A DNA stretch of 64,000 bases, taken from the sequence record MN794232.1; one strand, 5' to 3'. Below are positions 1,127 through 32,717 of this stretch, piece by piece. The notes under the pieces are model-generated. The model made no database searches and was not told where the DNA came from. It was given only the letters and a program-made list of their open reading frames with translations. The position numbers and the translations under genes were made by a program. How positions within the stretch are numbered: the first letter of the stretch is position 1; the number at the start of each line of letters is the position of its first letter.

Positions 1127-1188
1127 TTGACTGTATTACTTATTTAGGTTAATATCTCTCTCATCGAAACGAAAGAGAGAACATTATG
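1127..1188 (+). promoter_or_regulatory. Early promoter cassette
   Basis: TTGACT(1127)-17 bp-TAATAT(1150), then ATCGAAACGAAAGAGAGAACATTATG leader. Confidence 0.7.
1141..1146 (-). promoter_or_regulatory. Late promoter core TAAATA
   Basis: TAAATA on the - strand about 33 nt upstream of ORF 53..1108, inside the spacer of the divergent early promoter. Confidence 0.55.
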
Positions 1189-4531: not shown

Positions 4532-4825
4532 ATGAGAGAAGCAATTGCATTATTAAGCAACACGAGAATGGGATATACTGACATTAGCGCATTTGGCGAT
4601 CCAGTATTATATGTTCATGCGGGGCATGAGACGGTATTAAAAGTGCAATACACTGAAGATTGCTACTCATTTTACGACTACAGAAGCAAGTATCTTTATA
4701 CAGAGCAGTCCATCGACGACTTAGAGATACATTTGAAATCAATAGATGTCGGGTTAGACGATGATCTACCGTTAAATGGGAACATCGACAAAGACACGAT
4801 ACCAGACGGGGAATTTTTAGAATGA
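4532..4825 (+). CDS. Hypothetical acidic protein
   Basis: 97-aa ORF coupled to the next gene. Confidence 0.65.
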   Translation: MREAIALLSNTRMGYTDISAFGDPVLYVHAGHETVLKVQYTEDCYSFYDYRSKYLYTEQSIDDLEIHLKSIDVGLDDDLPLNGNIDKDTIPDGEFLE

Positions 4826-5742
4826 AGTTTAGTGAATATCAAAGAATAAACGAATCTCTAGATCGCCCTGCCAATTATAAACTGGTTAGAGAACTCCCAA
4901 ATTTAAACGTGTATGCGTTTCAAGTTGATGGTGTTTATTATGAAATAGACATCCAGAAATCAAACATACGAGAGCCTAATGGGATGCAGTCAATGAAAGC
5001 TGAAGTCTCATTCAAAGCACTCGACGGTAGTGGTTATCAACTAACCAAAAAAGACGATAAAACGGCACGAATTGTACTATCAACCGTAGTTGATGCTATC
5101 TTCAGCTTCGTACGCGAATACAATCCTGCTCAAATATTATATTCTGCATTCAACGATGCTGATCCGTCAGATGCTGCTAAACGGCTTCGCTTATATCAGA
5201 TCATGACTAAAGCAAAACTGCGTGAATTCCCTGAATATGATTTCCGAAACGTTGGGCGTGATTTCATCGTCTACGATGTCAATTACCAACAACGAGTCGA
5301 GGAATTTTCAAGAAGAGCACGTCGACCAGTGGGGTATGAAGAAAGATCAGACCACGTTGAAGTAAATTTATCACACGCCAACGCTTTTGCGTTTATACGG
5401 GCGTTTGGTGTAAATGATGGCGACTCAAAGAGCGGCGTACTAGGTAAAGGTCGAGCTTTCGTAGGCGCAACAAACGAAATTAAAGCACGTCTAAGAGTAG
5501 ATCGTGTGGTGTATGAAATGTCTGATAGAGAAGGATGGCTTGCGGCTCTTCAGCACCCTATTTTTGACTATGGCGAGGGTCCTGAAGTTGATCGAACATA
5601 TCTAGTCGGGGCATTTAAAAACTTCTATATCGTGTTGACTAGTCAAACAAGTCTAAAAATATACACCGATGATGCTGCGTTTACAAAATATGTGAATGCT
5701 TTCGACGCGCCATGGTTAAACCCAGAAATAATGGAATCTTAA
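4822..5742 (+). CDS. Putative internal head protein, paralogue 1
   Basis: 306 aa; N-terminus MKFSEYQRINES resembles T4 capsid-targeting sequences; N-domain similar to next ORF. Confidence 0.6.
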   Translation: MKFSEYQRINESLDRPANYKLVRELPNLNVYAFQVDGVYYEIDIQKSNIREPNGMQSMKAEVSFKALDGSGYQLTKKDDKTARIVLSTVVDAIFSFVREYNPAQILYSAFNDADPSDAAKRLRLYQIMTKAKLREFPEYDFRNVGRDFIVYDVNYQQRVEEFSRRARRPVGYEERSDHVEVNLSHANAFAFIRAFGVNDGDSKSGVLGKGRAFVGATNEIKARLRVDRVVYEMSDREGWLAALQHPIFDYGEGPEVDRTYLVGAFKNFYIVLTSQTSLKIYTDDAAFTKYVNAFDAPWLNPEIMES

Positions 5743-5744
5743 AA

Positions 5745-6596
5745 ATGAAATTTAGCGAATATCAAAACGAGCTAACAGAAGCATTTGATCGACCAGCACC
5801 GATCACAGCGCGTCGCGGCAATCAGAGTTTTTTCATGATTGGTGACACTGAGTACATGGTCGGGTTGTATTACGACGACTCGAAAAAATCACTCGGAGTT
5901 GACTTCATGCATAAGCCGGGTGATTCAGCAACGTACTACTACAGCTTAGCCAAAGGCAACTCAAAAGACGCAATGACTGTTTTTGCCACAGTGATTGCAG
6001 AAATCAAGCGGCTTATGAAAGACAACCCGGTAAATAAAATCAGCTTTAGCGCGTTTCAAGACTCTGATAGCTCAGATGCTAAAAAGCGTTTCCGTTTGTA
6101 CAAGCGTATGGCAGAACGTTTCAGCAAAGAGCTTGGGTTCAGAATGACCACGTATGGCGATTCTTTCACCATGACACGTATAAATCCTGTTGCAGTCAAT
6201 GTAGAAGAGCCAACTGGTTATGATACAGCGTGGGGTACTGAAATGCTCGATCTGTATGAAGTCAACGACGCTGCAATTGCCAAAGTCACAGAAGGTGATG
6301 GTGAATGGCGTTTGAATAACTGGAACAAGCTGATTGTTCGCAACGGTAAAGTAACACTAACATCGGGTCCAATTCGAATGTCAGACGCTTGGTACGATGC
6401 GTTTTACGACTTAGAATGGTATCACGATGAAGAAGGCGAACAATGGTTCGATGATGAACAGAAGATCGCGATCATCAATGGTAAAGTTTGGGTCATCAAC
6501 GACATGGAAATTACTATTTGGCCAAGTATTGAGAAATTAGAATTGCAAAGTGACTCGGAATTATCAAGCGGGACACGTCAATTGCTTGGATATTAA
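5745..6596 (+). CDS. Putative internal head protein, paralogue 2
   Basis: Start at 5745, MKFSEYQNELTEA; SAFQDSDSSDAKKRFRLY matches SAFNDADPSDAAKRLRLY in the previous ORF. Confidence 0.6.
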   Translation: MKFSEYQNELTEAFDRPAPITARRGNQSFFMIGDTEYMVGLYYDDSKKSLGVDFMHKPGDSATYYYSLAKGNSKDAMTVFATVIAEIKRLMKDNPVNKISFSAFQDSDSSDAKKRFRLYKRMAERFSKELGFRMTTYGDSFTMTRINPVAVNVEEPTGYDTAWGTEMLDLYEVNDAAIAKVTEGDGEWRLNNWNKLIVRNGKVTLTSGPIRMSDAWYDAFYDLEWYHDEEGEQWFDDEQKIAIINGKVWVINDMEITIWPSIEKLELQSDSELSSGTRQLLGY

Positions 6597-6600
6597 TCAG

Positions 6601-6625
6601 AAAGGTAGCTTCGGCTACCTTTTTT
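6601..6625 (+). terminator. Intrinsic terminator with UUCG loop
   Basis: AAAGGTAGC-TTCG-GCTACCTTT followed by a T-run. Confidence 0.85.
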
Positions 6626-7886: not shown

Positions 7887-8813
7887 ATGAAAAGTACAAT
7901 GTTTTTGAACAACATCACATGCATCGACCATGCATGGGTTGATGATATGGGTGAAATGAATGGTAATAGCTACAATCTATGTGTAGAAATTACCGGTGAA
8001 GTTGACGAAACTGAACAAGTCGTTATTGATTTCAGTGGTTGTAAGAAAGCAATCAAACATCTTGTGGATGATTCGGAATTCGCCATTGATCATCGTCTAA
8101 TCGTCGTTGACGGGTTTAGTGATGCAGTTCTTTCTCAAGTCGAAGATCGACTACGCATTCAAATCGACACGCCGGTCTTCCATGCAGTGTCTACGGTTGA
8201 CGACTGGTATCAAGTCATCAAGCCGAGCGAATTGATCGAAGCCGATTTCAAAATCCCTAGCGATTCTCTGTACATGTCGTATGTTACTGAGTATCTTGAA
8301 AATATGCTACTTGAACAGCTACGTAAACAAGGCTATCCTGTTACACACGTCGCTGTAGAGCTTTCAGAGTCGTTTGACTTACCATCTTGGGCAAACAGTC
8401 ACGTTGAATTTAACTACGCTCACGGGCTGCGTTCAAGCACATCATACGGATGTCAGAACATTGCACACGGTCACCGTTCATTCATTGCAGTAGATAAGCA
8501 CTTGAATAGTAACGGTCGCAAGGTACTGAAGCGCATTGCTAAAGAAATGAGCGGTTATATTGCTTGGTCAGAAAACATTCGCAAAGAAGATGAAGTGTCT
8601 TACACTTCAAATCGCGGCAACTTCTACTTGAGACACAGCAATATCAAAGTAATCCCGACTGAAACTACAGTCGAAAATCTAGCCAATTACATTGCAACTA
8701 CATACGAAGAAGAGTTCCAACGAATGGGCGTTCAGCGTGTGTGGGTATCTGAGGGTCTATCAAAAGGCTCGGTTGTAGACATCAAAATCAACAAAGAATT
8801 GCTCTATAAGTAA
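7887..8813 (+). CDS. queD: Two-domain QueD/PTPS-like 6-carboxytetrahydropterin synthase
   Basis: N-domain VIDF...IDHRL; C-domain AHG...C...HGH and TTVENLA; sits next to folE. Confidence 0.75.
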   Translation: MKSTMFLNNITCIDHAWVDDMGEMNGNSYNLCVEITGEVDETEQVVIDFSGCKKAIKHLVDDSEFAIDHRLIVVDGFSDAVLSQVEDRLRIQIDTPVFHAVSTVDDWYQVIKPSELIEADFKIPSDSLYMSYVTEYLENMLLEQLRKQGYPVTHVAVELSESFDLPSWANSHVEFNYAHGLRSSTSYGCQNIAHGHRSFIAVDKHLNSNGRKVLKRIAKEMSGYIAWSENIRKEDEVSYTSNRGNFYLRHSNIKVIPTETTVENLANYIATTYEEEFQRMGVQRVWVSEGLSKGSVVDIKINKELLYK

Positions 8814-8881
8814 TCAACAAATTAATGTTTAGTAGCACGTCTCGGCGTGCTATTATTGTTTTCTATCAATGAGGAAATAGA

Positions 8882-9550
8882 ATGTTAGACAAAAATAAAG
8901 TAGATCCAGTACTTGGACAAAAAGTTGAAGCGCATCTTCGTAAAATCGGGATGCACACGCCGACTGTTGAAAACGGTCTAACTGATGATGAAAAGAAAGC
9001 TATTCTTGAAGATCGTTTCACTGACATCATGCAAGCTCTTGGTCTTGACTTATCAGACGATTCATTAGTTGATACTCCGAAGCGTTGGGCTAAGATGATG
9101 GTGAATGAGCTTATGAGCGGTCTATCGCCAGATATGTTCCCGAAATGCACTGCTGTAGACAACAAGATGAACTACGATCAGATGGTTTGTGAAAAAGGAA
9201 TTACTGTTCTTTCTCAGTGTGAGCATCACATCGTAACAATCGACGGCTTTGCCACTGTCGCATACATTCCGAAGAACAAAGTTCTTGGTCTGTCGAAAAT
9301 GAATCGAATTGTTGAGTACTTCGCTCGTCGTCCGCAGATTCAAGAACGGCTGACTGTTCAAATCGCTGAAGCACTGAAGTTCATTCTTGAAACTGAAGAC
9401 GTAGCGGTATTGATCGACGCCAAACACTATTGTGTCAAAGCACGCGGTGTTGAAGATAACAACTCAAGCACAGTGACTAGCCACTTATCTGGTGCTTTCC
9501 GTAACGAACCAGAGGCTCGCGCTGAGTTTATGTCACTTGCACGAGGGTAA
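8882..9550 (+). CDS. folE: GTP cyclohydrolase I
   Basis: TPKRWAK, SQCEHH, GLSKMNRIVEYFARRPQIQERLT, HYCVKARG. Confidence 0.97.
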   Translation: MLDKNKVDPVLGQKVEAHLRKIGMHTPTVENGLTDDEKKAILEDRFTDIMQALGLDLSDDSLVDTPKRWAKMMVNELMSGLSPDMFPKCTAVDNKMNYDQMVCEKGITVLSQCEHHIVTIDGFATVAYIPKNKVLGLSKMNRIVEYFARRPQIQERLTVQIAEALKFILETEDVAVLIDAKHYCVKARGVEDNNSSTVTSHLSGAFRNEPEARAEFMSLARG

Positions 9551-9553
9551 TTG

Positions 9554-10930
9554 ATGATAATTGAATACGTTATGTCTGCGACGGGTCATGCTCGTCTCGG
9601 TGCAGCACATAAGCTAATGGACGTGGTTGACACGTCCTATTTGCGCGACATTCTAAATGCAGCGCAAGATCTCGACGGGGTTCACAAAATCAGTATGCTG
9701 TACAATGCATATACTGAAAAGAAAGTCGGTCATCAAATCAATGACTTGTTCGGTGATTCTGTATACAAGGTACATGTCGATTCAGGTGGTCTACAGATAG
9801 TCAACTTGGGTTTAGAGAACACGCCCGAACTTCGCAAAGCAGTATACGAGAATCAAGCAGAATCTGGTGATATTGGCATGTGTTTTGACGAAATCCCATT
9901 GCACAACGAAGCAAAGGGTGGTGGCGCTGCTCGTATCAACACGAAAGACAAGGTCTTCATGTATGATCTAGCGTACAAGTACGGCGTCAAAACAGGTAAG
10001 AACATTCGCGCACAAATCGAAACTTATATCGAGAAGGGTAGCAAATGCAAGCCGTATATCATCTTACAAGGCAACTCAGACGACGACTTTAAAGCATTCA
10101 GTGACGGGATTATGTCTCAACTCGAAGGCGTTGAAGATCACATTGCTGGTTGTGCTGCTGCCGATACATGCATTGGTAATGGCGTGCGTGAGTCTATCGA
10201 CATGATGAGCGTCATTCCGAAACTCAACATCCCAGAGAAAGCAAAGAAATCAGTGCATATGCTGGGAGTTGGCTCAGTTAAACGTCTATTGCCTGCTGTA
10301 GCACTTATCAGAAGTGGTTATTTTGGCGATGACTTTCATATCAGCTATGACTCATCAACGCATACTGGATGTCTGACTAACCGAGAATACACAGACAAGC
10401 TTGGTCGTCGTCGTAAAATCTCAGGTCACGGAATTATGAAAGATGGTAAGAAATTGCCTTCTCGTGAGCTTGATGAAATGCTAGATGAAGTGTGGGGTCG
10501 ATTCGGTCATGCTCTACCGCGTAGCAAAGAAGAGTTCAAGGAATTCGCGACACGTCTGTGGTTGAAAGAACTCGACAAAGAAACAATGACTGACGAAGAT
10601 ATTGTGTTTGAAGTTGCTTGCAACTTGTGTATAATCTTATCACAAGTCAACAACTTTCAAGCGATTATATCTGAAACGTTTGACTTGAATACGCCAAAAG
10701 CTGCTGATCTGTCAGCGTTCTTCGGTGGTTCTGTTGAGAAAAAAGAGCCGCAAGAGGGATTCAAGAAGTGGTCAGCGATTCGTCGCCTTGATGTCCTTGA
10801 TAAACTACTTGACGTTAAAACTATCGAAGCATATGACCGCTGGCACAGTAGCTACGTTGATAGATTACCGTCAATGCGCATTCGTCGCGGCACGACTGCT
10901 GAATTCCCGGCTTTCAAAGAACAAGAATAG
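9554..10930 (+). CDS. dpdA: TGT-fold guanine transglycosylase, probably DNA-acting (DpdA2-like)
   Basis: HVDSGG, CFDEIP, ILQG, HMLGVGS and SYDSS motifs of the TGT/DpdA fold; lies between folE and queF. Confidence 0.7.
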   Translation: MIIEYVMSATGHARLGAAHKLMDVVDTSYLRDILNAAQDLDGVHKISMLYNAYTEKKVGHQINDLFGDSVYKVHVDSGGLQIVNLGLENTPELRKAVYENQAESGDIGMCFDEIPLHNEAKGGGAARINTKDKVFMYDLAYKYGVKTGKNIRAQIETYIEKGSKCKPYIILQGNSDDDFKAFSDGIMSQLEGVEDHIAGCAAADTCIGNGVRESIDMMSVIPKLNIPEKAKKSVHMLGVGSVKRLLPAVALIRSGYFGDDFHISYDSSTHTGCLTNREYTDKLGRRRKISGHGIMKDGKKLPSRELDEMLDEVWGRFGHALPRSKEEFKEFATRLWLKELDKETMTDEDIVFEVACNLCIILSQVNNFQAIISETFDLNTPKAADLSAFFGGSVEKKEPQEGFKKWSAIRRLDVLDKLLDVKTIEAYDRWHSSYVDRLPSMRIRRGTTAEFPAFKEQE

Positions 10931-10948
10931 CGCCTACGGGCGCTCTTT
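10929..10948 (+). terminator. UACG-loop hairpin, weak terminator or stabiliser
   Basis: AGCGCC-TACG-GGCGCT followed by CTTT; same hairpin at 28541. Confidence 0.5.
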
Positions 10949-10959
10949 ATGAGGTAAAC

Positions 10960-11868
10960 ATGAGCAATTATGATCAAGTTTCAGCTATTGCTGCTGAACA
11001 TTTAGGTAAAAAAGCTGGCGATTACAGCGATTTCGTTGACATCGTAGAAGTTCGCCCTGATTTACTCGTGCCAATCCCGCGTGAACTGAATCGAACTGAC
11101 TACGGTATCACAAATGAAGACTTTGCAGGGTTTGATACGTGGCATGGCTTCGAAGTTTCTGCACTGACTGAACAAGGTCTGCCTGTATCAGGCATGGCTA
11201 AAGTAGTGTATCCGAGTGATTCACCGAACATCGTTGAAAGTAAATCAATGAAACTGTACTGGAATAGCTTCAACATGGCTAAAGTCGCTGCGACTCGTGC
11301 TGAAGTGAAAGATGCAATTGAAGCAATCGCGTCGCGTGATCTATCTGAAGTCATCGGTGCGCCTGTTCAAGTGAGTTTCTTCACTGAAAAGCTAACTCAA
11401 CCTCATGGTATGACTGGCTTTGCTGAACTCGACAAATATGTTTCTGAATCGACTGTGTTTGACTCTGAGAGTGGTGCTGACACCGAGCTATTGCAAGAGT
11501 CGCACATCAAGAAACTGAAAGTGTTCACGCCTAATCTGCGTTCAAACTGTCGCGTTACACACCAACCCGACTTCGGTGATTTGTACGTATACATGAGCGG
11601 CGAAAAGACTCCGACTGTTGATAGTCTGATGCAATACATCGTTTCTTTCCGCAAAGAGAATCATTTCCATGAAGAATGCGTTGAAATGATTTACAAAGCG
11701 TTGCTTGACAAGTTCGACCCGACTGAACTGATGGTCACAGCGTTATACACACGTCGCGGTGGATGGAATATCTGTCCAGCACGAGCGACACACGAAGAGC
11801 TATTGCCAGAAGCACTTGGTAGTAAATCTGTCTCGCACACTAACGGAAGTTGTTTATTCCGTCAGTAA
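10960..11868 (+). CDS. queF: NADPH-dependent preQ0 reductase (bimodular QueF)
   Basis: LLVPIPR, QueF motif ESKSMKLYWNSF, catalytic SNCRVTHQPD, FHEECVE, YTRRGG. Confidence 0.93.
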   Translation: MSNYDQVSAIAAEHLGKKAGDYSDFVDIVEVRPDLLVPIPRELNRTDYGITNEDFAGFDTWHGFEVSALTEQGLPVSGMAKVVYPSDSPNIVESKSMKLYWNSFNMAKVAATRAEVKDAIEAIASRDLSEVIGAPVQVSFFTEKLTQPHGMTGFAELDKYVSESTVFDSESGADTELLQESHIKKLKVFTPNLRSNCRVTHQPDFGDLYVYMSGEKTPTVDSLMQYIVSFRKENHFHEECVEMIYKALLDKFDPTELMVTALYTRRGGWNICPARATHEELLPEALGSKSVSHTNGSCLFRQ

Positions 11869-11923
11869 TAAGAGCTATGATGAGTGTTCAATTGTGAGCA
11901 CTCATATACTTGAGAGGTTAAAA

Positions 11924-12640
11924 ATGAAAGTAGTATCTGTTCTAAGCGGTGGCTTGGACTCAACAATCCTTACGTACAAACTAGTTGACGAATTCGGCAA
12001 AGACAATGTGTTTGCATTATCGTTCTACTACGGTCAAAAACAGTCGATTGAGCTAGAAAAAGCTAAATTGACTTGTCAAAAGCTCGGCATCGAGCATCGT
12101 CTAATTGACATTTCATTCTTAGGTGAAGTCGTCGCGCCAGTCTGTGCGAATATCGCTGGTTCAGATGTTGCTATGCCAACTATTCAAGATGTTCTCGGTG
12201 ATCCTCAGCCACCAACTGAAGTTCCATATCGTAACATGCTATTGAACACAATCGCGTTCTCATTCGCACAAGCAAATGATTGTTCAGCGGTGTTTACTGG
12301 CATTCAAGTGCATGACGCATATGGTTATTGGGACTGCACGCAAGATTTTCTTGACGGTATGAACAAAATTTCAGCACTGAATCGTCAACACGAAATTTTG
12401 TTACTTGCGCCATTCGCTCAAATGTCAAAAGCAGATGAAATAGAAATCGGCGTTCAGCTTGGTGTGCCGTTCGAGGATAGTCTGACTTGTTACGACCCGA
12501 ACGAAGCTGGCGAAAGCTGTGGTAAATGTCCGTCGTGTGCTGAACGCATCATGAACTTCGGCAAAGCTGGTATAGTCGATCCTGCGCCTTACTCAATTGA
12601 CATCCCGTGGGAGCAAGTATTTGCTAAGGCAGGTCATTAA
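11924..12640 (+). CDS. queC: 7-cyano-7-deazaguanine synthase
   Basis: SGGLDS, YGQKQ..E, VPYRN, CYD...CGKCPSC..R; start at 11924 after GAGAGG. Confidence 0.95.
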   Translation: MKVVSVLSGGLDSTILTYKLVDEFGKDNVFALSFYYGQKQSIELEKAKLTCQKLGIEHRLIDISFLGEVVAPVCANIAGSDVAMPTIQDVLGDPQPPTEVPYRNMLLNTIAFSFAQANDCSAVFTGIQVHDAYGYWDCTQDFLDGMNKISALNRQHEILLLAPFAQMSKADEIEIGVQLGVPFEDSLTCYDPNEAGESCGKCPSCAERIMNFGKAGIVDPAPYSIDIPWEQVFAKAGH

Positions 12641-13248
12641 TGTGTGGATTATTTGCTGCTAGAAGCAAGCAAGAGCTTATTGAATTGTCAAAAAGCAACA
12701 TTCATCGTGGTTCGCGTACTCACTCTGTGAGTACGTTTAAGAACGGTCACGTGACGATTCATAAGTTTACAGGCGCGTTTGACGCGACGAATGTTCCCGA
12801 TAGTGCAGATTTTTATATCTGTCACGTACAAGCACCAACGGGAACAAGTGCTCAAGCACATCCCGCTATTGTGACAATCGAAGAGAATGGTCAGTTACAC
12901 GATTCACACGTGTGGCACAATGGCATTCTTAAAGATCATTACATGAAAAAGCAGTCTCAAGATTGGGATACTGCACACATTGCCGAAGCAATTTGCTACG
13001 GAAAACTAAACGAACTTGACGGTACATTTGCTTGTTTTCACTTCATAAACGGTCATTTGCGTGTATTTCGCAATGAAATCAGCCCGCTGTTCATGAGTGA
13101 AGACGGGACATCGTTTAGCAGCACGCGAACGATTCTGACACCAGAGCATGTTGAGCCGAATAAAGTGTTTAACATCGACTTGAAGACGTTTAAAATGTCA
13201 ATCGTAAACGAGTTCAAGACTCTAGAAAACCCCTATTTCTTTATGTGA
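12640..13248 (+). CDS. Class II (Ntn) glutamine amidotransferase, stand-alone
   Basis: MCG N-terminus (Cys2 nucleophile), HRGS, HVQAPT, WHNGIL; TAATG-coupled to queC. Confidence 0.8.
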   Translation: MCGLFAARSKQELIELSKSNIHRGSRTHSVSTFKNGHVTIHKFTGAFDATNVPDSADFYICHVQAPTGTSAQAHPAIVTIEENGQLHDSHVWHNGILKDHYMKKQSQDWDTAHIAEAICYGKLNELDGTFACFHFINGHLRVFRNEISPLFMSEDGTSFSSTRTILTPEHVEPNKVFNIDLKTFKMSIVNEFKTLENPYFFM

Positions 13249-31663: not shown

Positions 31664-31726
31664 GAAAACAAACTCGCGTTACATATGTTGCACGTGTGCA
31701 GGTAATTTAGCACAAGGAAGCACATT

Positions 31727-32194
31727 ATGAAAATCGCATTGTTATTATTGACTGTGGCTTTACTGCCACAAATAGCGAACGCTCACGTTCATGACGATTG
31801 GATGACAGTTCACCGCGTGGATGTTCGCACTCATGAGCTAATACATACAGCAAGTACGACCTCAACCAATCATCTTGCTGTCCTCACAATTGACTGTGAT
31901 AAGTCAGTCACGTTATATGAAGCAAGAGACTATTTGATTGCCTCGAATCCGGATGACGTTTGGTATTCTATCGACGGGAATCCATATGTGCGAATCAAAA
32001 ACGATCAGCTTAAACATCAAGCGTCTGTTACTACCTTTGTCGGTAGTATCAAAGCGATTGAGACACTTAAAACAGGCAATGAACTCGAATATGTTGTTAA
32101 CAACAACGTTCGAGGAGTGAAATATTCGTATCACTTCAGTCTGAAAGGAATGAATGATGCATACGAAGCATTAGGTGAATTATGTAAGTGGTAA
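31727..32194 (+). CDS. Putative periplasmic protein
   Basis: Signal peptide ending ANA; 155 aa. Confidence 0.7.
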   Translation: MKIALLLLTVALLPQIANAHVHDDWMTVHRVDVRTHELIHTASTTSTNHLAVLTIDCDKSVTLYEARDYLIASNPDDVWYSIDGNPYVRIKNDQLKHQASVTTFVGSIKAIETLKTGNELEYVVNNNVRGVKYSYHFSLKGMNDAYEALGELCKW

Positions 32195-32198
32195 CACT

Positions 32199-32717
32199 AT
32201 GAAAATTATATTCTTGGATATTGACGGCGTTCTAAACAATGCTTTAGAAGCCGATGAGCACAAGGACGTGCTACTTAATGGTGAGTATCAGGGGATTTAT
32301 TCTCCTCGATGCGTAGACCGCTTAAACGATCTCGTTGAAATGACTGACGCACACATTGTCCTTACCAGTGTGTGGCGTTGTGGTCTGTCAATTGATGAGA
32401 TCAACACAATGCTTCGAGCCATGGGAGTCAACGCTGAATGCATTGGTAAAACCGATATGCTCGATCACAAATACTCATGGGCGTTTCGTGGCAATGAGAT
32501 TCTTAAATGGATTCATGACAACGAAGAGCTTATTGGTAAACGTAGATACGAGTATCGAAGCTATGTCATCTTAGATGATGACACTGATATGCTGTTATGG
32601 CAACGTCATAACTATGTAAACTGCGACCCTGAGATTGGCATGACTGATCGCGTGGTCGCAAAAGCTGCTGCAATACTGAATAACGCACCTTGTACCGATA
32701 CTGGTCAAGAGTTTTAA
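32199..32717 (+). CDS. HAD-family phosphatase (HAD_SAK_2-like)
   Basis: IFLDIDGVLN, IVLTSVWR, RGNEI, YVILDDD. Confidence 0.82.
   Translation: MKIIFLDIDGVLNNALEADEHKDVLLNGEYQGIYSPRCVDRLNDLVEMTDAHIVLTSVWRCGLSIDEINTMLRAMGVNAECIGKTDMLDHKYSWAFRGNEILKWIHDNEELIGKRRYEYRSYVILDDDTDMLLWQRHNYVNCDPEIGMTDRVVAKAAAILNNAPCTDTGQEF

What the first reader, a model, noticed from the sequence alone, without database searches (positions are those of the whole stretch)
4822..6596. Tandem paralogues with capsid-targeting-like N-termini and unrelated C-terminal domains
Seen: both start MKFSEYQ, then INES or LTEA, and share about 150 aa (F..DRP, TV...I, SAF.D.D.SDA.KR.RLY..M). Their C-halves are unrelated. Known: T4 internal proteins start MKT(Y/F)xEF and are cut by the gp21 protease after (I/L)xE. 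Inference: head-packaged, injected proteins built as a shared module plus a variable effector, like T4 IPI, which inhibits a host nuclease.
Basis: partly seen in the sequence, partly recalled or inferred. Interest (0 to 1): 0.65.

Follow-up and report, generated by a model that had tools for sequence, protein, structure and literature searches.

The report
Virion-packaged phage proteins with T4-like leader
Two neighbouring genes of a KVP40-type Vibrio phage encode sister proteins with a short T4-style head-loading leader on an acetyltransferase-like domain; a close relative's copy has been found in phage particles, so they are probably delivered into the host with the DNA, though their target is unknown.

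Summary
ORF A (4822-5742) and ORF B are tandem paralogues (28% identity, E 3e-14) that both begin MKFSEYQ. ORF B really starts at 5745, not at the 5712 ATG used for KVP40.0116. The C-halves are not unrelated: profile comparison shows distant homology.

The window is Vibrio phage VH1_2019, a KVP40-like T4 relative. The shared module is Pfam DUF6934, an almost purely viral family with a GNAT-like fold. It occurs alone, at either end of proteins, and in tandem arrays.

- The leaders end in I-x-E and L-x-E, the cleavage motif of the T4-type prohead protease, which KVP40 encodes.
- The following residues match the site where T4 Alt is known to be cut.
- In a published particle proteome of Schizotequatrovirus 6E351A, the ORF B orthologue (53% identical, same leader) gives 37 and 51 counts. 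Its operon neighbours are absent.

Still untested: N-terminal processing, a location inside the head, injection, and any IPI-like inhibitor role. ORF A has no orthologue in that proteome.

Other notes of this scan had flagged similar leaders on other genes of this genome. I class this as a new member of a known kind.

The parts
4822..5742 (+). ORF A, 306 aa (orthologue of KVP40.0115). Its start overlaps the stop of the upstream ORF (ATGA).
4822..4854 (+). Leader of ORF A, 11 codons, MKFSEYQ then R-I-N-E. The predicted prohead-protease cut is after E11.
   Evidence: T4 precedent
4855..5277 (+). N-domain of ORF A, DUF6934 type with a GNAT-like fold by homology to ORF B.
5278..5739 (+). C-domain of ORF A (cluster A), distantly homologous to the C-domains of ORF B and of paralogue 3.
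5745..6596 (+). ORF B, 283 aa from the MKFSEYQ start (orthologue of KVP40.0116, which is annotated from an ATG 33 nt upstream).
5745..5780 (+). Leader of ORF B, 12 codons, MKFSEYQ then N-E-L-T-E. The predicted cut is after E12.
5781..6188 (+). N-domain of ORF B, DUF6934 type. The AlphaFold model has a GNAT-like fold, and the domain is basic (pI 9.5).
6189..6593 (+). C-domain of ORF B: a confident alpha/beta model with no solved-structure match, very acidic (pI 4.1). The same fold appears in other phage proteins.
6599..6624 (+). Terminator-like hairpin with a T-run that closes the operon.
1127..1155 (+). Sigma-70-like promoter candidate ahead of the tightly packed + strand gene run that ends with ORFs A and B (a consensus match only).

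Best explanation
ORFs A and B encode about 33 kDa two-domain proteins that are built into the phage particle, most likely into the prohead core, through a short N-terminal leader that works like the T4 capsid-targeting sequence.

Proposed sequence of events:
- The leader (MK, two aromatic residues three apart, then [LI]-x-E) brings the protein into the scaffold core.
- The S77 prohead protease cuts after the Glu (E11 in A, E12 in B), leaving mature proteins that start S-L-D-R-P and A-F-D-R-P.
- The mature proteins stay in the head with the DNA and enter the host at infection.

The mature protein is a basic GNAT-like DUF6934 domain followed by a fast-evolving acidic alpha/beta domain.

What is shown:
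- paralogy of the two ORFs;
- family membership and fold;
- protease-site context;
- presence of the ORF B orthologue in particles of a congener.

What is inferred:
- a location inside the head;
- cleavage of the leader;
- ejection into the host;
- that ORF A behaves like ORF B.

The activity in the host is a guess. It may be binding or acylation of a host factor by the GNAT-like domain, with the variable C-domain giving specificity.
For: Context. The window is VH1_2019, a KVP40-like T4 relative. KVP40 has an S77 protease (E 1.7e-105), and the gp23 cleavage site ends L-N-E followed by A.

T4 precedents.
- IPII and IPIII leaders are ten residues ending I-A-E; the IPI leader ends I-T-E.
- In the T4 leader, residues 4 and 7 (aromatic) direct targeting and residues 8 and 10 direct processing (PMC9026906).
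- Alt is cut at ITE-6, before L-F-D (PMC5694885; sequence).

Family-wide leader pattern.
- 98 N-terminal copies have L or I at P3 in 89%, and an aromatic residue at P7 in 41%.
- 183 internal copies lack the aromatics.
- 5 of the 19 ten-residue leaders are 7-8/10 identical to the T4 leader.

Direct particle evidence. VP6E351A_0154 (53% identical to ORF B, same leader, same locus upstream of cd) gives 37 and 51 counts in particles. For comparison, the tail tube gives 47/58, the protease 17/28, ligase 0/2 and ThyA 1/3. Its operon neighbours are absent.

Other family members.
- The paralogue-3 orthologue VP6E351A_0094 gives 16/61, next to the Alt-like ART at 122/233.
- KVP40 paralogue 3 has a perfect TATAAATA 31 nt upstream.
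- PA5oct gp135, a family member (E 1e-33), is annotated as a structural protein by ESI-MS/MS, and that phage also has an S77 protease.
- P0146, with three copies of the domain, lies directly behind terminase and portal genes.
Against: - No N-terminal peptide data exist, so cleavage is unproven.
- The [LIV]-x-E is also conserved at internal domain copies together with F-D-x-P-Y, and the Glu is invariant. It may therefore be a structural or catalytic part of the domain rather than a cut site.
- The aromatic residues sit at positions 3 and 6, not 4 and 7, and the leaders are 11-12 rather than 10 residues long.
- No T4-type late promoter lies within one mismatch upstream, and the genes sit at the end of an early-looking operon. 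The particle-borne 6E351A orthologue lacks one too, so this point is weak.
- The 6E351A particles were PEG-precipitated, not gradient-purified, and some enzymes appear at up to about 20 counts.
- The proteins are acidic overall, unlike the basic T4 IPs.
- ORF A has no orthologue in 6E351A, so it has no proteomic support.
Confidence: 0.6

Rival explanations
1. Virion-associated, but not through a cleaved head-targeting leader. The proteins sit elsewhere in the particle (tail, baseplate or capsid surface), or enter the head through the domain itself. On this view the N-terminal helix and the [LIV]-x-E-x-F-D motif are simply part of the DUF6934 fold.
For: The boundary motif is kept at internal copies that cannot act as N-terminal signals. 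PA5oct gp135 is in particles with only a five-residue leader. Mass spectrometry cannot say where in the particle a protein lies.
Against: N-terminal copies carry extra T4-leader-like aromatic residues that internal copies lack, and they show a stronger L/I preference at P3. The identical I-T-E before L-F-D context is cut in T4 Alt. No tail or baseplate homology was found.
Confidence: 0.2
2. Ordinary early cytoplasmic proteins: GNAT-like enzymes or binders used in host takeover. On this view they are not packaged, and the particle signal in 6E351A is carry-over from lysate.
For: They sit in an early-type operon with no late promoter. Tandem stand-alone copies occur in non-structural regions of other phages. 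The particles were PEG-precipitated, and some metabolic enzymes were also detected.
Against: Counts of 37 and 51 exceed those of every recognisable enzyme in the table, and the proteins co-transcribed from the same operon are undetected. A second paralogue and a PA5oct member are also particle-borne.
Confidence: 0.12
3. Active injected acetyltransferases. The DUF6934 domain binds acyl-CoA and modifies a host protein on entry, much as T4 Alt ADP-ribosylates RNA polymerase or AcrVA5 acetylates Cas12a. This refines the best explanation rather than excluding it.
For: GNAT fold: nearly all of the top 50 VIA matches are GNATs, at Z 6.5-7.6. AcrVA5 and PanZ are among the Foldseek hits. The family consensus has a T-G-x-G-D loop before helix 3 and an invariant R-x-x-L-Y in helix 4.
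Against: The glycine loop is degenerate in ORFs A and B and in paralogue 3. There is no sequence match to any GNAT Pfam family or PDB chain. Arrays of up to five copies are unusual for enzymes. The Z scores are in the range where only the fold is shared.
Confidence: 0.2

Closest known systems
[quoted passage not shown]
   Same: T4-type phage with an S77 protease. Short N-terminal leader starting MK, with two aromatic residues three apart and ending [LI]-x-E. A paralogous, fast-diverging family. An orthologue is present in particles.
   Different: About 33 kDa, two domains and acidic overall, against 8-20 kDa basic proteins. No sequence similarity beyond the leader. The leader is 11-12 residues with the aromatics one position earlier. 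Processing and injection have not been shown.
T4 Alt (head-packaged ADP-ribosyltransferase, cut at ITE-6)
   Same: The mature N-terminus context I-T-E then L-F-D is the boundary motif of the DUF6934 family. KVP40 paralogue 3 occupies the alt position behind DNA ligase, next to an Alt-like ART. Both are abundant in 6E351A particles.
   Different: No detectable profile similarity between the Alt N-terminal region and DUF6934. ORFs A and B have no ART domain.
Pfam DUF6934 (PF22028), function unknown
   Same: The shared N-module belongs here. Profile hits include arrays scoring far above Pfam's cut-off.
   Different: ORFs A and B themselves score 20-22 bits, below the 27-bit cut-off. Pfam gives no fold, function or virion link.
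GNAT acetyltransferases, including the phage anti-CRISPR AcrVA5
   Same: The core beta-alpha-beta fold of the N-domain.
   Different: Helices 1-2 are missing, there is no sequence-level match, and the CoA loop is degenerate in these two proteins. No activity is known.
Polyvalent head-packaged effector proteins of phages (Iyer, Burroughs, Aravind)
   Same: Relatives with several DUF6934 copies are giant multidomain proteins, one of them directly behind the portal gene.
   Different: ORFs A and B are small two-domain proteins that are not fused to MuF or portal and do not lie in the head module.

Membership tests
T4-type capsid-targeted internal head proteins | N-terminal leader of about 10-20 residues with aromatic targeting residues (T4 positions 4 and 7) | tested here: inconclusive
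   F3 and Y6 have the same i, i+3 spacing but sit one position earlier, in leaders of 11 and 12 residues. Many family members have the exact T4 register.
T4-type capsid-targeted internal head proteins | Leader ends in the gp21 site [LI]-x-E | tested here: met
   I-N-E at residues 9-11 of ORF A and L-T-E at residues 10-12 of ORF B. The same context is cut in T4 Alt.
T4-type capsid-targeted internal head proteins | The phage encodes an S77 (gp21) prohead protease | tested here: met
   PF03420 hit at E 1.7e-105 in KVP40, the nearest held genome. The gp23 site is conserved. The window's own assembly is not held.
T4-type capsid-targeted internal head proteins | Present in purified virions | tested here: met
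   Literature only, and only for the ORF B orthologue (53% identity): 37 and 51 counts in PEG-precipitated 6E351A particles. ORF A is not covered.
T4-type capsid-targeted internal head proteins | Leader removed in the mature virion, and protein ejected with the DNA | not testable with these tools
   No peptide-level data are held.
T4-type capsid-targeted internal head proteins | Late transcription (TATAAATA promoter) | tested here: not met
   None within one mismatch upstream. The particle-borne orthologue lacks one as well, so this feature is not decisive. Paralogue 3 has one.
Pfam DUF6934 (PF22028) | Score above Pfam's gathering cut-off (27 bits) | tested here: not met
   21.9 and 20.4 bits.
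Pfam DUF6934 (PF22028) | Significant profile-level homology to undoubted members | tested here: met
   The profile of the three paralogues finds 809 proteins. Among them, arrays score 58-163 bits on PF22028.
GNAT superfamily | GNAT core fold | tested here: met
   Model pLDDT is 92. Residues 17-148 align to about 100 residues of many GNATs at Z 6.5-7.6 and rmsd about 3.2.
GNAT superfamily | Q/R-x-x-G-x-G/A CoA pyrophosphate loop | tested here: inconclusive
   The family consensus T-G-x-G-D fits the motif. ORF B has an insertion there and ORF A has no glycine.
GNAT superfamily | Acyl transfer activity | not testable with these tools
   Needs biochemistry.

The most novel reading that the evidence does not exclude
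DUF6934 is the ancestral internal-head-protein module of T4-like and related large phages. On this reading, its N-terminal helix is the evolutionary source of the T4 capsid-targeting sequence and of the Alt propeptide. The giant proteins with three to five abutting DUF6934 copies, each starting [LIV]-x-E then A/L-F/L-D, would be polyproteins that the prohead protease cuts into many separate internal proteins inside the head.
Probability: 0.2. Interest if true: 0.8.

Novelty: new member of a known kind. Interest (0 to 1): 0.55.

Why it matters
Proteins injected with phage DNA act before any phage gene is expressed, so they are prime candidates for counter-defence and host takeover. Outside T4 itself, few such proteins are known.

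This work links an uncharacterised viral family of hundreds of members (DUF6934) to three things: a fold (GNAT-like), a T4-style loading and processing signal, and published particle proteomics. It also gives KVP40-type phages, which are used against aquaculture vibrios, two concrete candidates. The predicted mature N-termini can be checked directly.

Tried and rejected
- Homology of the T4 Alt N-terminal region to DUF6934: hmmsearch and hhalign were negative. An Alt homologue search returned only near-identical sequences, so no better profile could be built. Alt could not be folded here.
- T4 IPs versus the domain profile: no similarity.
- RNA-seq timing: no RNA run holds the region.
- Word-based homologue search: found only close Vibrio phage relatives.
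- The search for related loci with the paralogue profile: found only KVP40-type contigs.
- Solved-structure sequence search: nothing.
- C-domain fold: best Z is 4.5 (CorC_HlyC), which I do not accept as a match.
- The idea that all family units are basic, IP-like DNA binders: rejected. Units inside arrays are often acidic.
- Papers on phi-pp2 and PVA8: these hold no particle proteome.
- The KVP40 genome paper: not held.
It was rewritten to read the string from files.

Full report
**What is there.**
The window matches Vibrio phage VH1_2019 at 100% and KVP40 at 98%. This is a Schizotequatrovirus, a large T4 relative.

ORF A (4822-5742, 306 aa) is the KVP40.0115 orthologue. ORF B is the KVP40.0116 orthologue. 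ORF B's longest frame starts at 5712, but the MKFSEYQ methionine is at 5745. The paralogue, all orthologues and the cluster representative start there. I therefore take 5745-6596 (283 aa) as the gene.

ORF A's ATG overlaps the stop of the upstream ORF. ORF B starts five bases after the first base of ORF A's stop codon (two bases lie between). A hairpin terminator follows at 6599-6624.

**The observation.**
- BLASTP between the two proteins gives 28% identity over about 200 residues, E 3e-14.
- The shared motifs are real.
- The C-halves show no BLAST similarity to each other. However, homologues fall into three C-half clusters: 0115-like, 0116-like and a third paralogue. These clusters are joined by weak links. 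hhalign gives E 2e-6 (prob 89%) for cluster A against cluster C, and E 4e-4 for A against B, with a visible P-x-G-Y ... N-x-x-A ... W pattern.
- PHROG 6387 also spans both proteins completely.

The two proteins are thus full-length paralogues whose C-domains have diverged almost beyond recognition.

**More copies in the genome.**
- KVP40 has a third paralogue at 31688-32569. It lies directly behind DNA ligase and is convergent with an Alt-like ADP-ribosyltransferase. This is the position of alt in T4.
- A fourth protein, KVP40.0371, sits next to the head genes and carries the domain at its C-terminus.
- Only ORFs A and B lie in the window.

**What the shared module is.**
A profile of the three paralogues found 809 proteins at E up to 0.001 among 1.84 billion representatives. 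These include:
- stand-alone proteins of 140-170 residues;
- N-terminal, internal and C-terminal copies;
- abutting arrays of three to five copies in proteins of 1100-1600 residues.

The arrays score far above the cut-off on Pfam DUF6934. ORFs A and B and paralogue 3 each give sub-threshold hits to the same family. Atlas clusters are 94-100% viral.

An AlphaFold model of ORF B has mean pLDDT 92. Residues 17-148 match GNAT acetyltransferases almost exclusively (Z 6.5-7.6, about 100 residues, rmsd about 3.2). The weak Foldseek hits include AcrVA5 and PanZ. No solved structure is related by sequence.

Family-wide invariant residues are the Glu that ends the leader and an Arg and a Tyr in the last helix. 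A T-G-x-G-D loop precedes helix 3 in most members, but it is degenerate in ORFs A and B.

The C-domain, modelled alone, has pLDDT 93. It has no convincing solved-structure match; the best Z is 4.5. It does resemble uncharacterised proteins of phi-pp2, an Erwinia phage and a Dickeya phage. It is very acidic (pI 4.1), while the N-domain is basic (pI 9.5).

**The leader.**
T4 IPII and IPIII begin with the same ten residues, ending I-A-E. IPI's leader ends I-T-E. In T4, residues 4 and 7 (aromatic) carry targeting and residues 8 and 10 carry processing (PMC9026906).

T4 Alt loses six residues at ITE-6 (PMC5694885). Its sequence continues L-F-D. This is exactly the DUF6934 boundary motif.

I compared 98 N-terminal and 183 internal domain copies:

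| Feature | N-terminal copies | Internal copies |
|---|---|---|
| Glu at P1 | required by the way copies were located (invariant in A2, A4) | required likewise |
| P3 residue | L or I in 89% | L 43%, V 24%, I 21%, T 7% |
| Aromatic at P7 | 41% | none |
| Phe at P4 | 18% | none |

Of the 19 leaders that are exactly ten residues long, 5 share 7-8 residues with the T4 leader.

So part of the motif ([LIV]-x-E, then A/L-F/L-D-x-P) belongs to the domain itself. The N-terminal extension looks like a true T4-type targeting peptide.

ORFs A and B carry a variant. The aromatic residues are at positions 3 and 6, and the leaders are 11 and 12 residues long. The variant is strongly conserved among orthologues down to about 40% identity.

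KVP40 encodes an S77 protease, and its gp23 site is conserved.

**Direct evidence from a particle proteome.**
A study of Schizotequatroviruses (PMC12028318) analysed PEG-precipitated 6E351A particles by tandem mass spectrometry.

The single gene at the syntenic locus upstream of cd and queD is VP6E351A_0154 (QZI87329.1, 288 aa, PHROG 6387). It is 53% identical to ORF B over the full length and has the same leader.

Spectral counts from Table S4:

| Protein | Replicate 1 | Replicate 2 |
|---|---|---|
| VP6E351A_0154 (ORF B orthologue) | 37 | 51 |
| Tail tube | 47 | 58 |
| Head-tail adaptor | 36 | 32 |
| Prohead protease | 17 | 28 |
| VP6E351A_0094 (paralogue-3 orthologue) | 16 | 61 |
| Alt-like ART next to it | 122 | 233 |
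| DNA ligase | 0 | 2 |
| Thymidylate synthase | 1 | 3 |
| SSB | 4 | 2 |
| FolE | 13 | 7 |

The genes flanking 0154 in the same operon, including cd, are absent from the table.

Independent support:
- PA5oct gp135 is a strong family member (E 1e-33). It is annotated as a structural protein found by ESI-MS/MS, in a cluster with two other particle proteins. PA5oct also has an S77 protease.
- A 2215-residue relative lies directly behind terminase, a portal-2H fusion and two GNAT genes.

**Points against.**
- No T4-type late promoter lies upstream. The genes end a tightly packed early-looking operon.
- However, the particle-borne 6E351A orthologue has none either, so this argument is weak. Paralogue 3 does have a perfect TATAAATA 31 nt upstream, spaced as at gp22 and gp23.
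- Cleavage, a head-interior location and ejection have not been shown.
- The particles were not gradient-purified.
- ORF A has no orthologue in 6E351A.

**Verdict.**
- The paralogy is real.
- The 'unrelated C-halves' claim is superficial.
- The head-packaging inference is substantially supported for ORF B and plausible for ORF A.
- The function after delivery is unknown.

I rate this a new member of the known class of T4-type packaged internal proteins. It comes with a family-level link (DUF6934, GNAT-like fold, built-in protease-site motif) that I did not find described; a full-text search for DUF6934 found one unrelated paper.

Other notes of this scan (s1-160690, s1-156887) had already flagged T4-like leaders on other genes of this genome.

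Noticed in passing
window 5712-5744: KVP40.0116 and several relatives are annotated from an ATG 33 nt upstream of the conserved MKFSEYQ start. That makes the annotated gene overlap ORF A by 31 nt. The annotated start is probably wrong.
   Followed up: partly
L003:1486-2367 (KVP40 31688-32569), outside the window: A third paralogue with a different leader (M-I-I-F-E ... L-x-E). It has a perfect T4-type late promoter 31 nt upstream. It sits behind DNA ligase and is convergent with an Alt-like ART, which is the T4 alt position.
   Followed up: partly
L030:1462-2421 minus strand (KVP40.0371): A fourth DUF6934 protein. It has an unknown 160-residue N-terminal part, and the domain at its C-terminus is preceded by L-T-E. 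It lies beside the head gene cluster.
   Followed up: partly
L020:13458-15503 minus strand (T4 alt): The T4 Alt propeptide site (I-T-E then L-F-D) is identical to the DUF6934 boundary motif. By eye, the Alt N-terminal region resembles the last two helices of the domain, but profile searches do not confirm this. A precomputed Pfam family, PF26846, covers that region; my local Pfam scan did not return it.
   Followed up: partly
L038:10001-16648: A 2215-residue protein with three DUF6934 copies lies directly after split terminase genes, a portal fused to a 2H phosphoesterase, and two canonical GNAT genes. This is a layout typical of head-packaged polyvalent effectors.
   Followed up: no
L021:10001-11789: In a T4-like metagenomic contig, a two-copy DUF6934 protein is followed by a 284-residue protein. 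That protein does not match the domain profile, yet it begins with a similar leader ending I-E-E before A-F.
   Followed up: no
L007:18233-19684 and L006:19187-19831 (KVP40): Two unrelated KVP40 proteins begin with ten-residue leaders in the exact T4 register: a HEAT-repeat protein and a methyltransferase. Table S4 of PMC12028318 lists hypothetical particle proteins of similar size (64 kDa and 24 kDa), but I did not verify that they are the same proteins.
   Followed up: partly
BFVD I6W6Y6 (phi-pp2, 179 aa): The C-domain fold of ORF B recurs as a stand-alone protein in KVP40-type phages, and in Erwinia and Dickeya phage proteins. The C-domain is therefore itself a mobile phage module.
   Followed up: no
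window 7887-13248: Downstream of cd lies the 7-deazaguanine (preQ1) DNA-modification cluster, which another note of this scan has already described.
   Followed up: no
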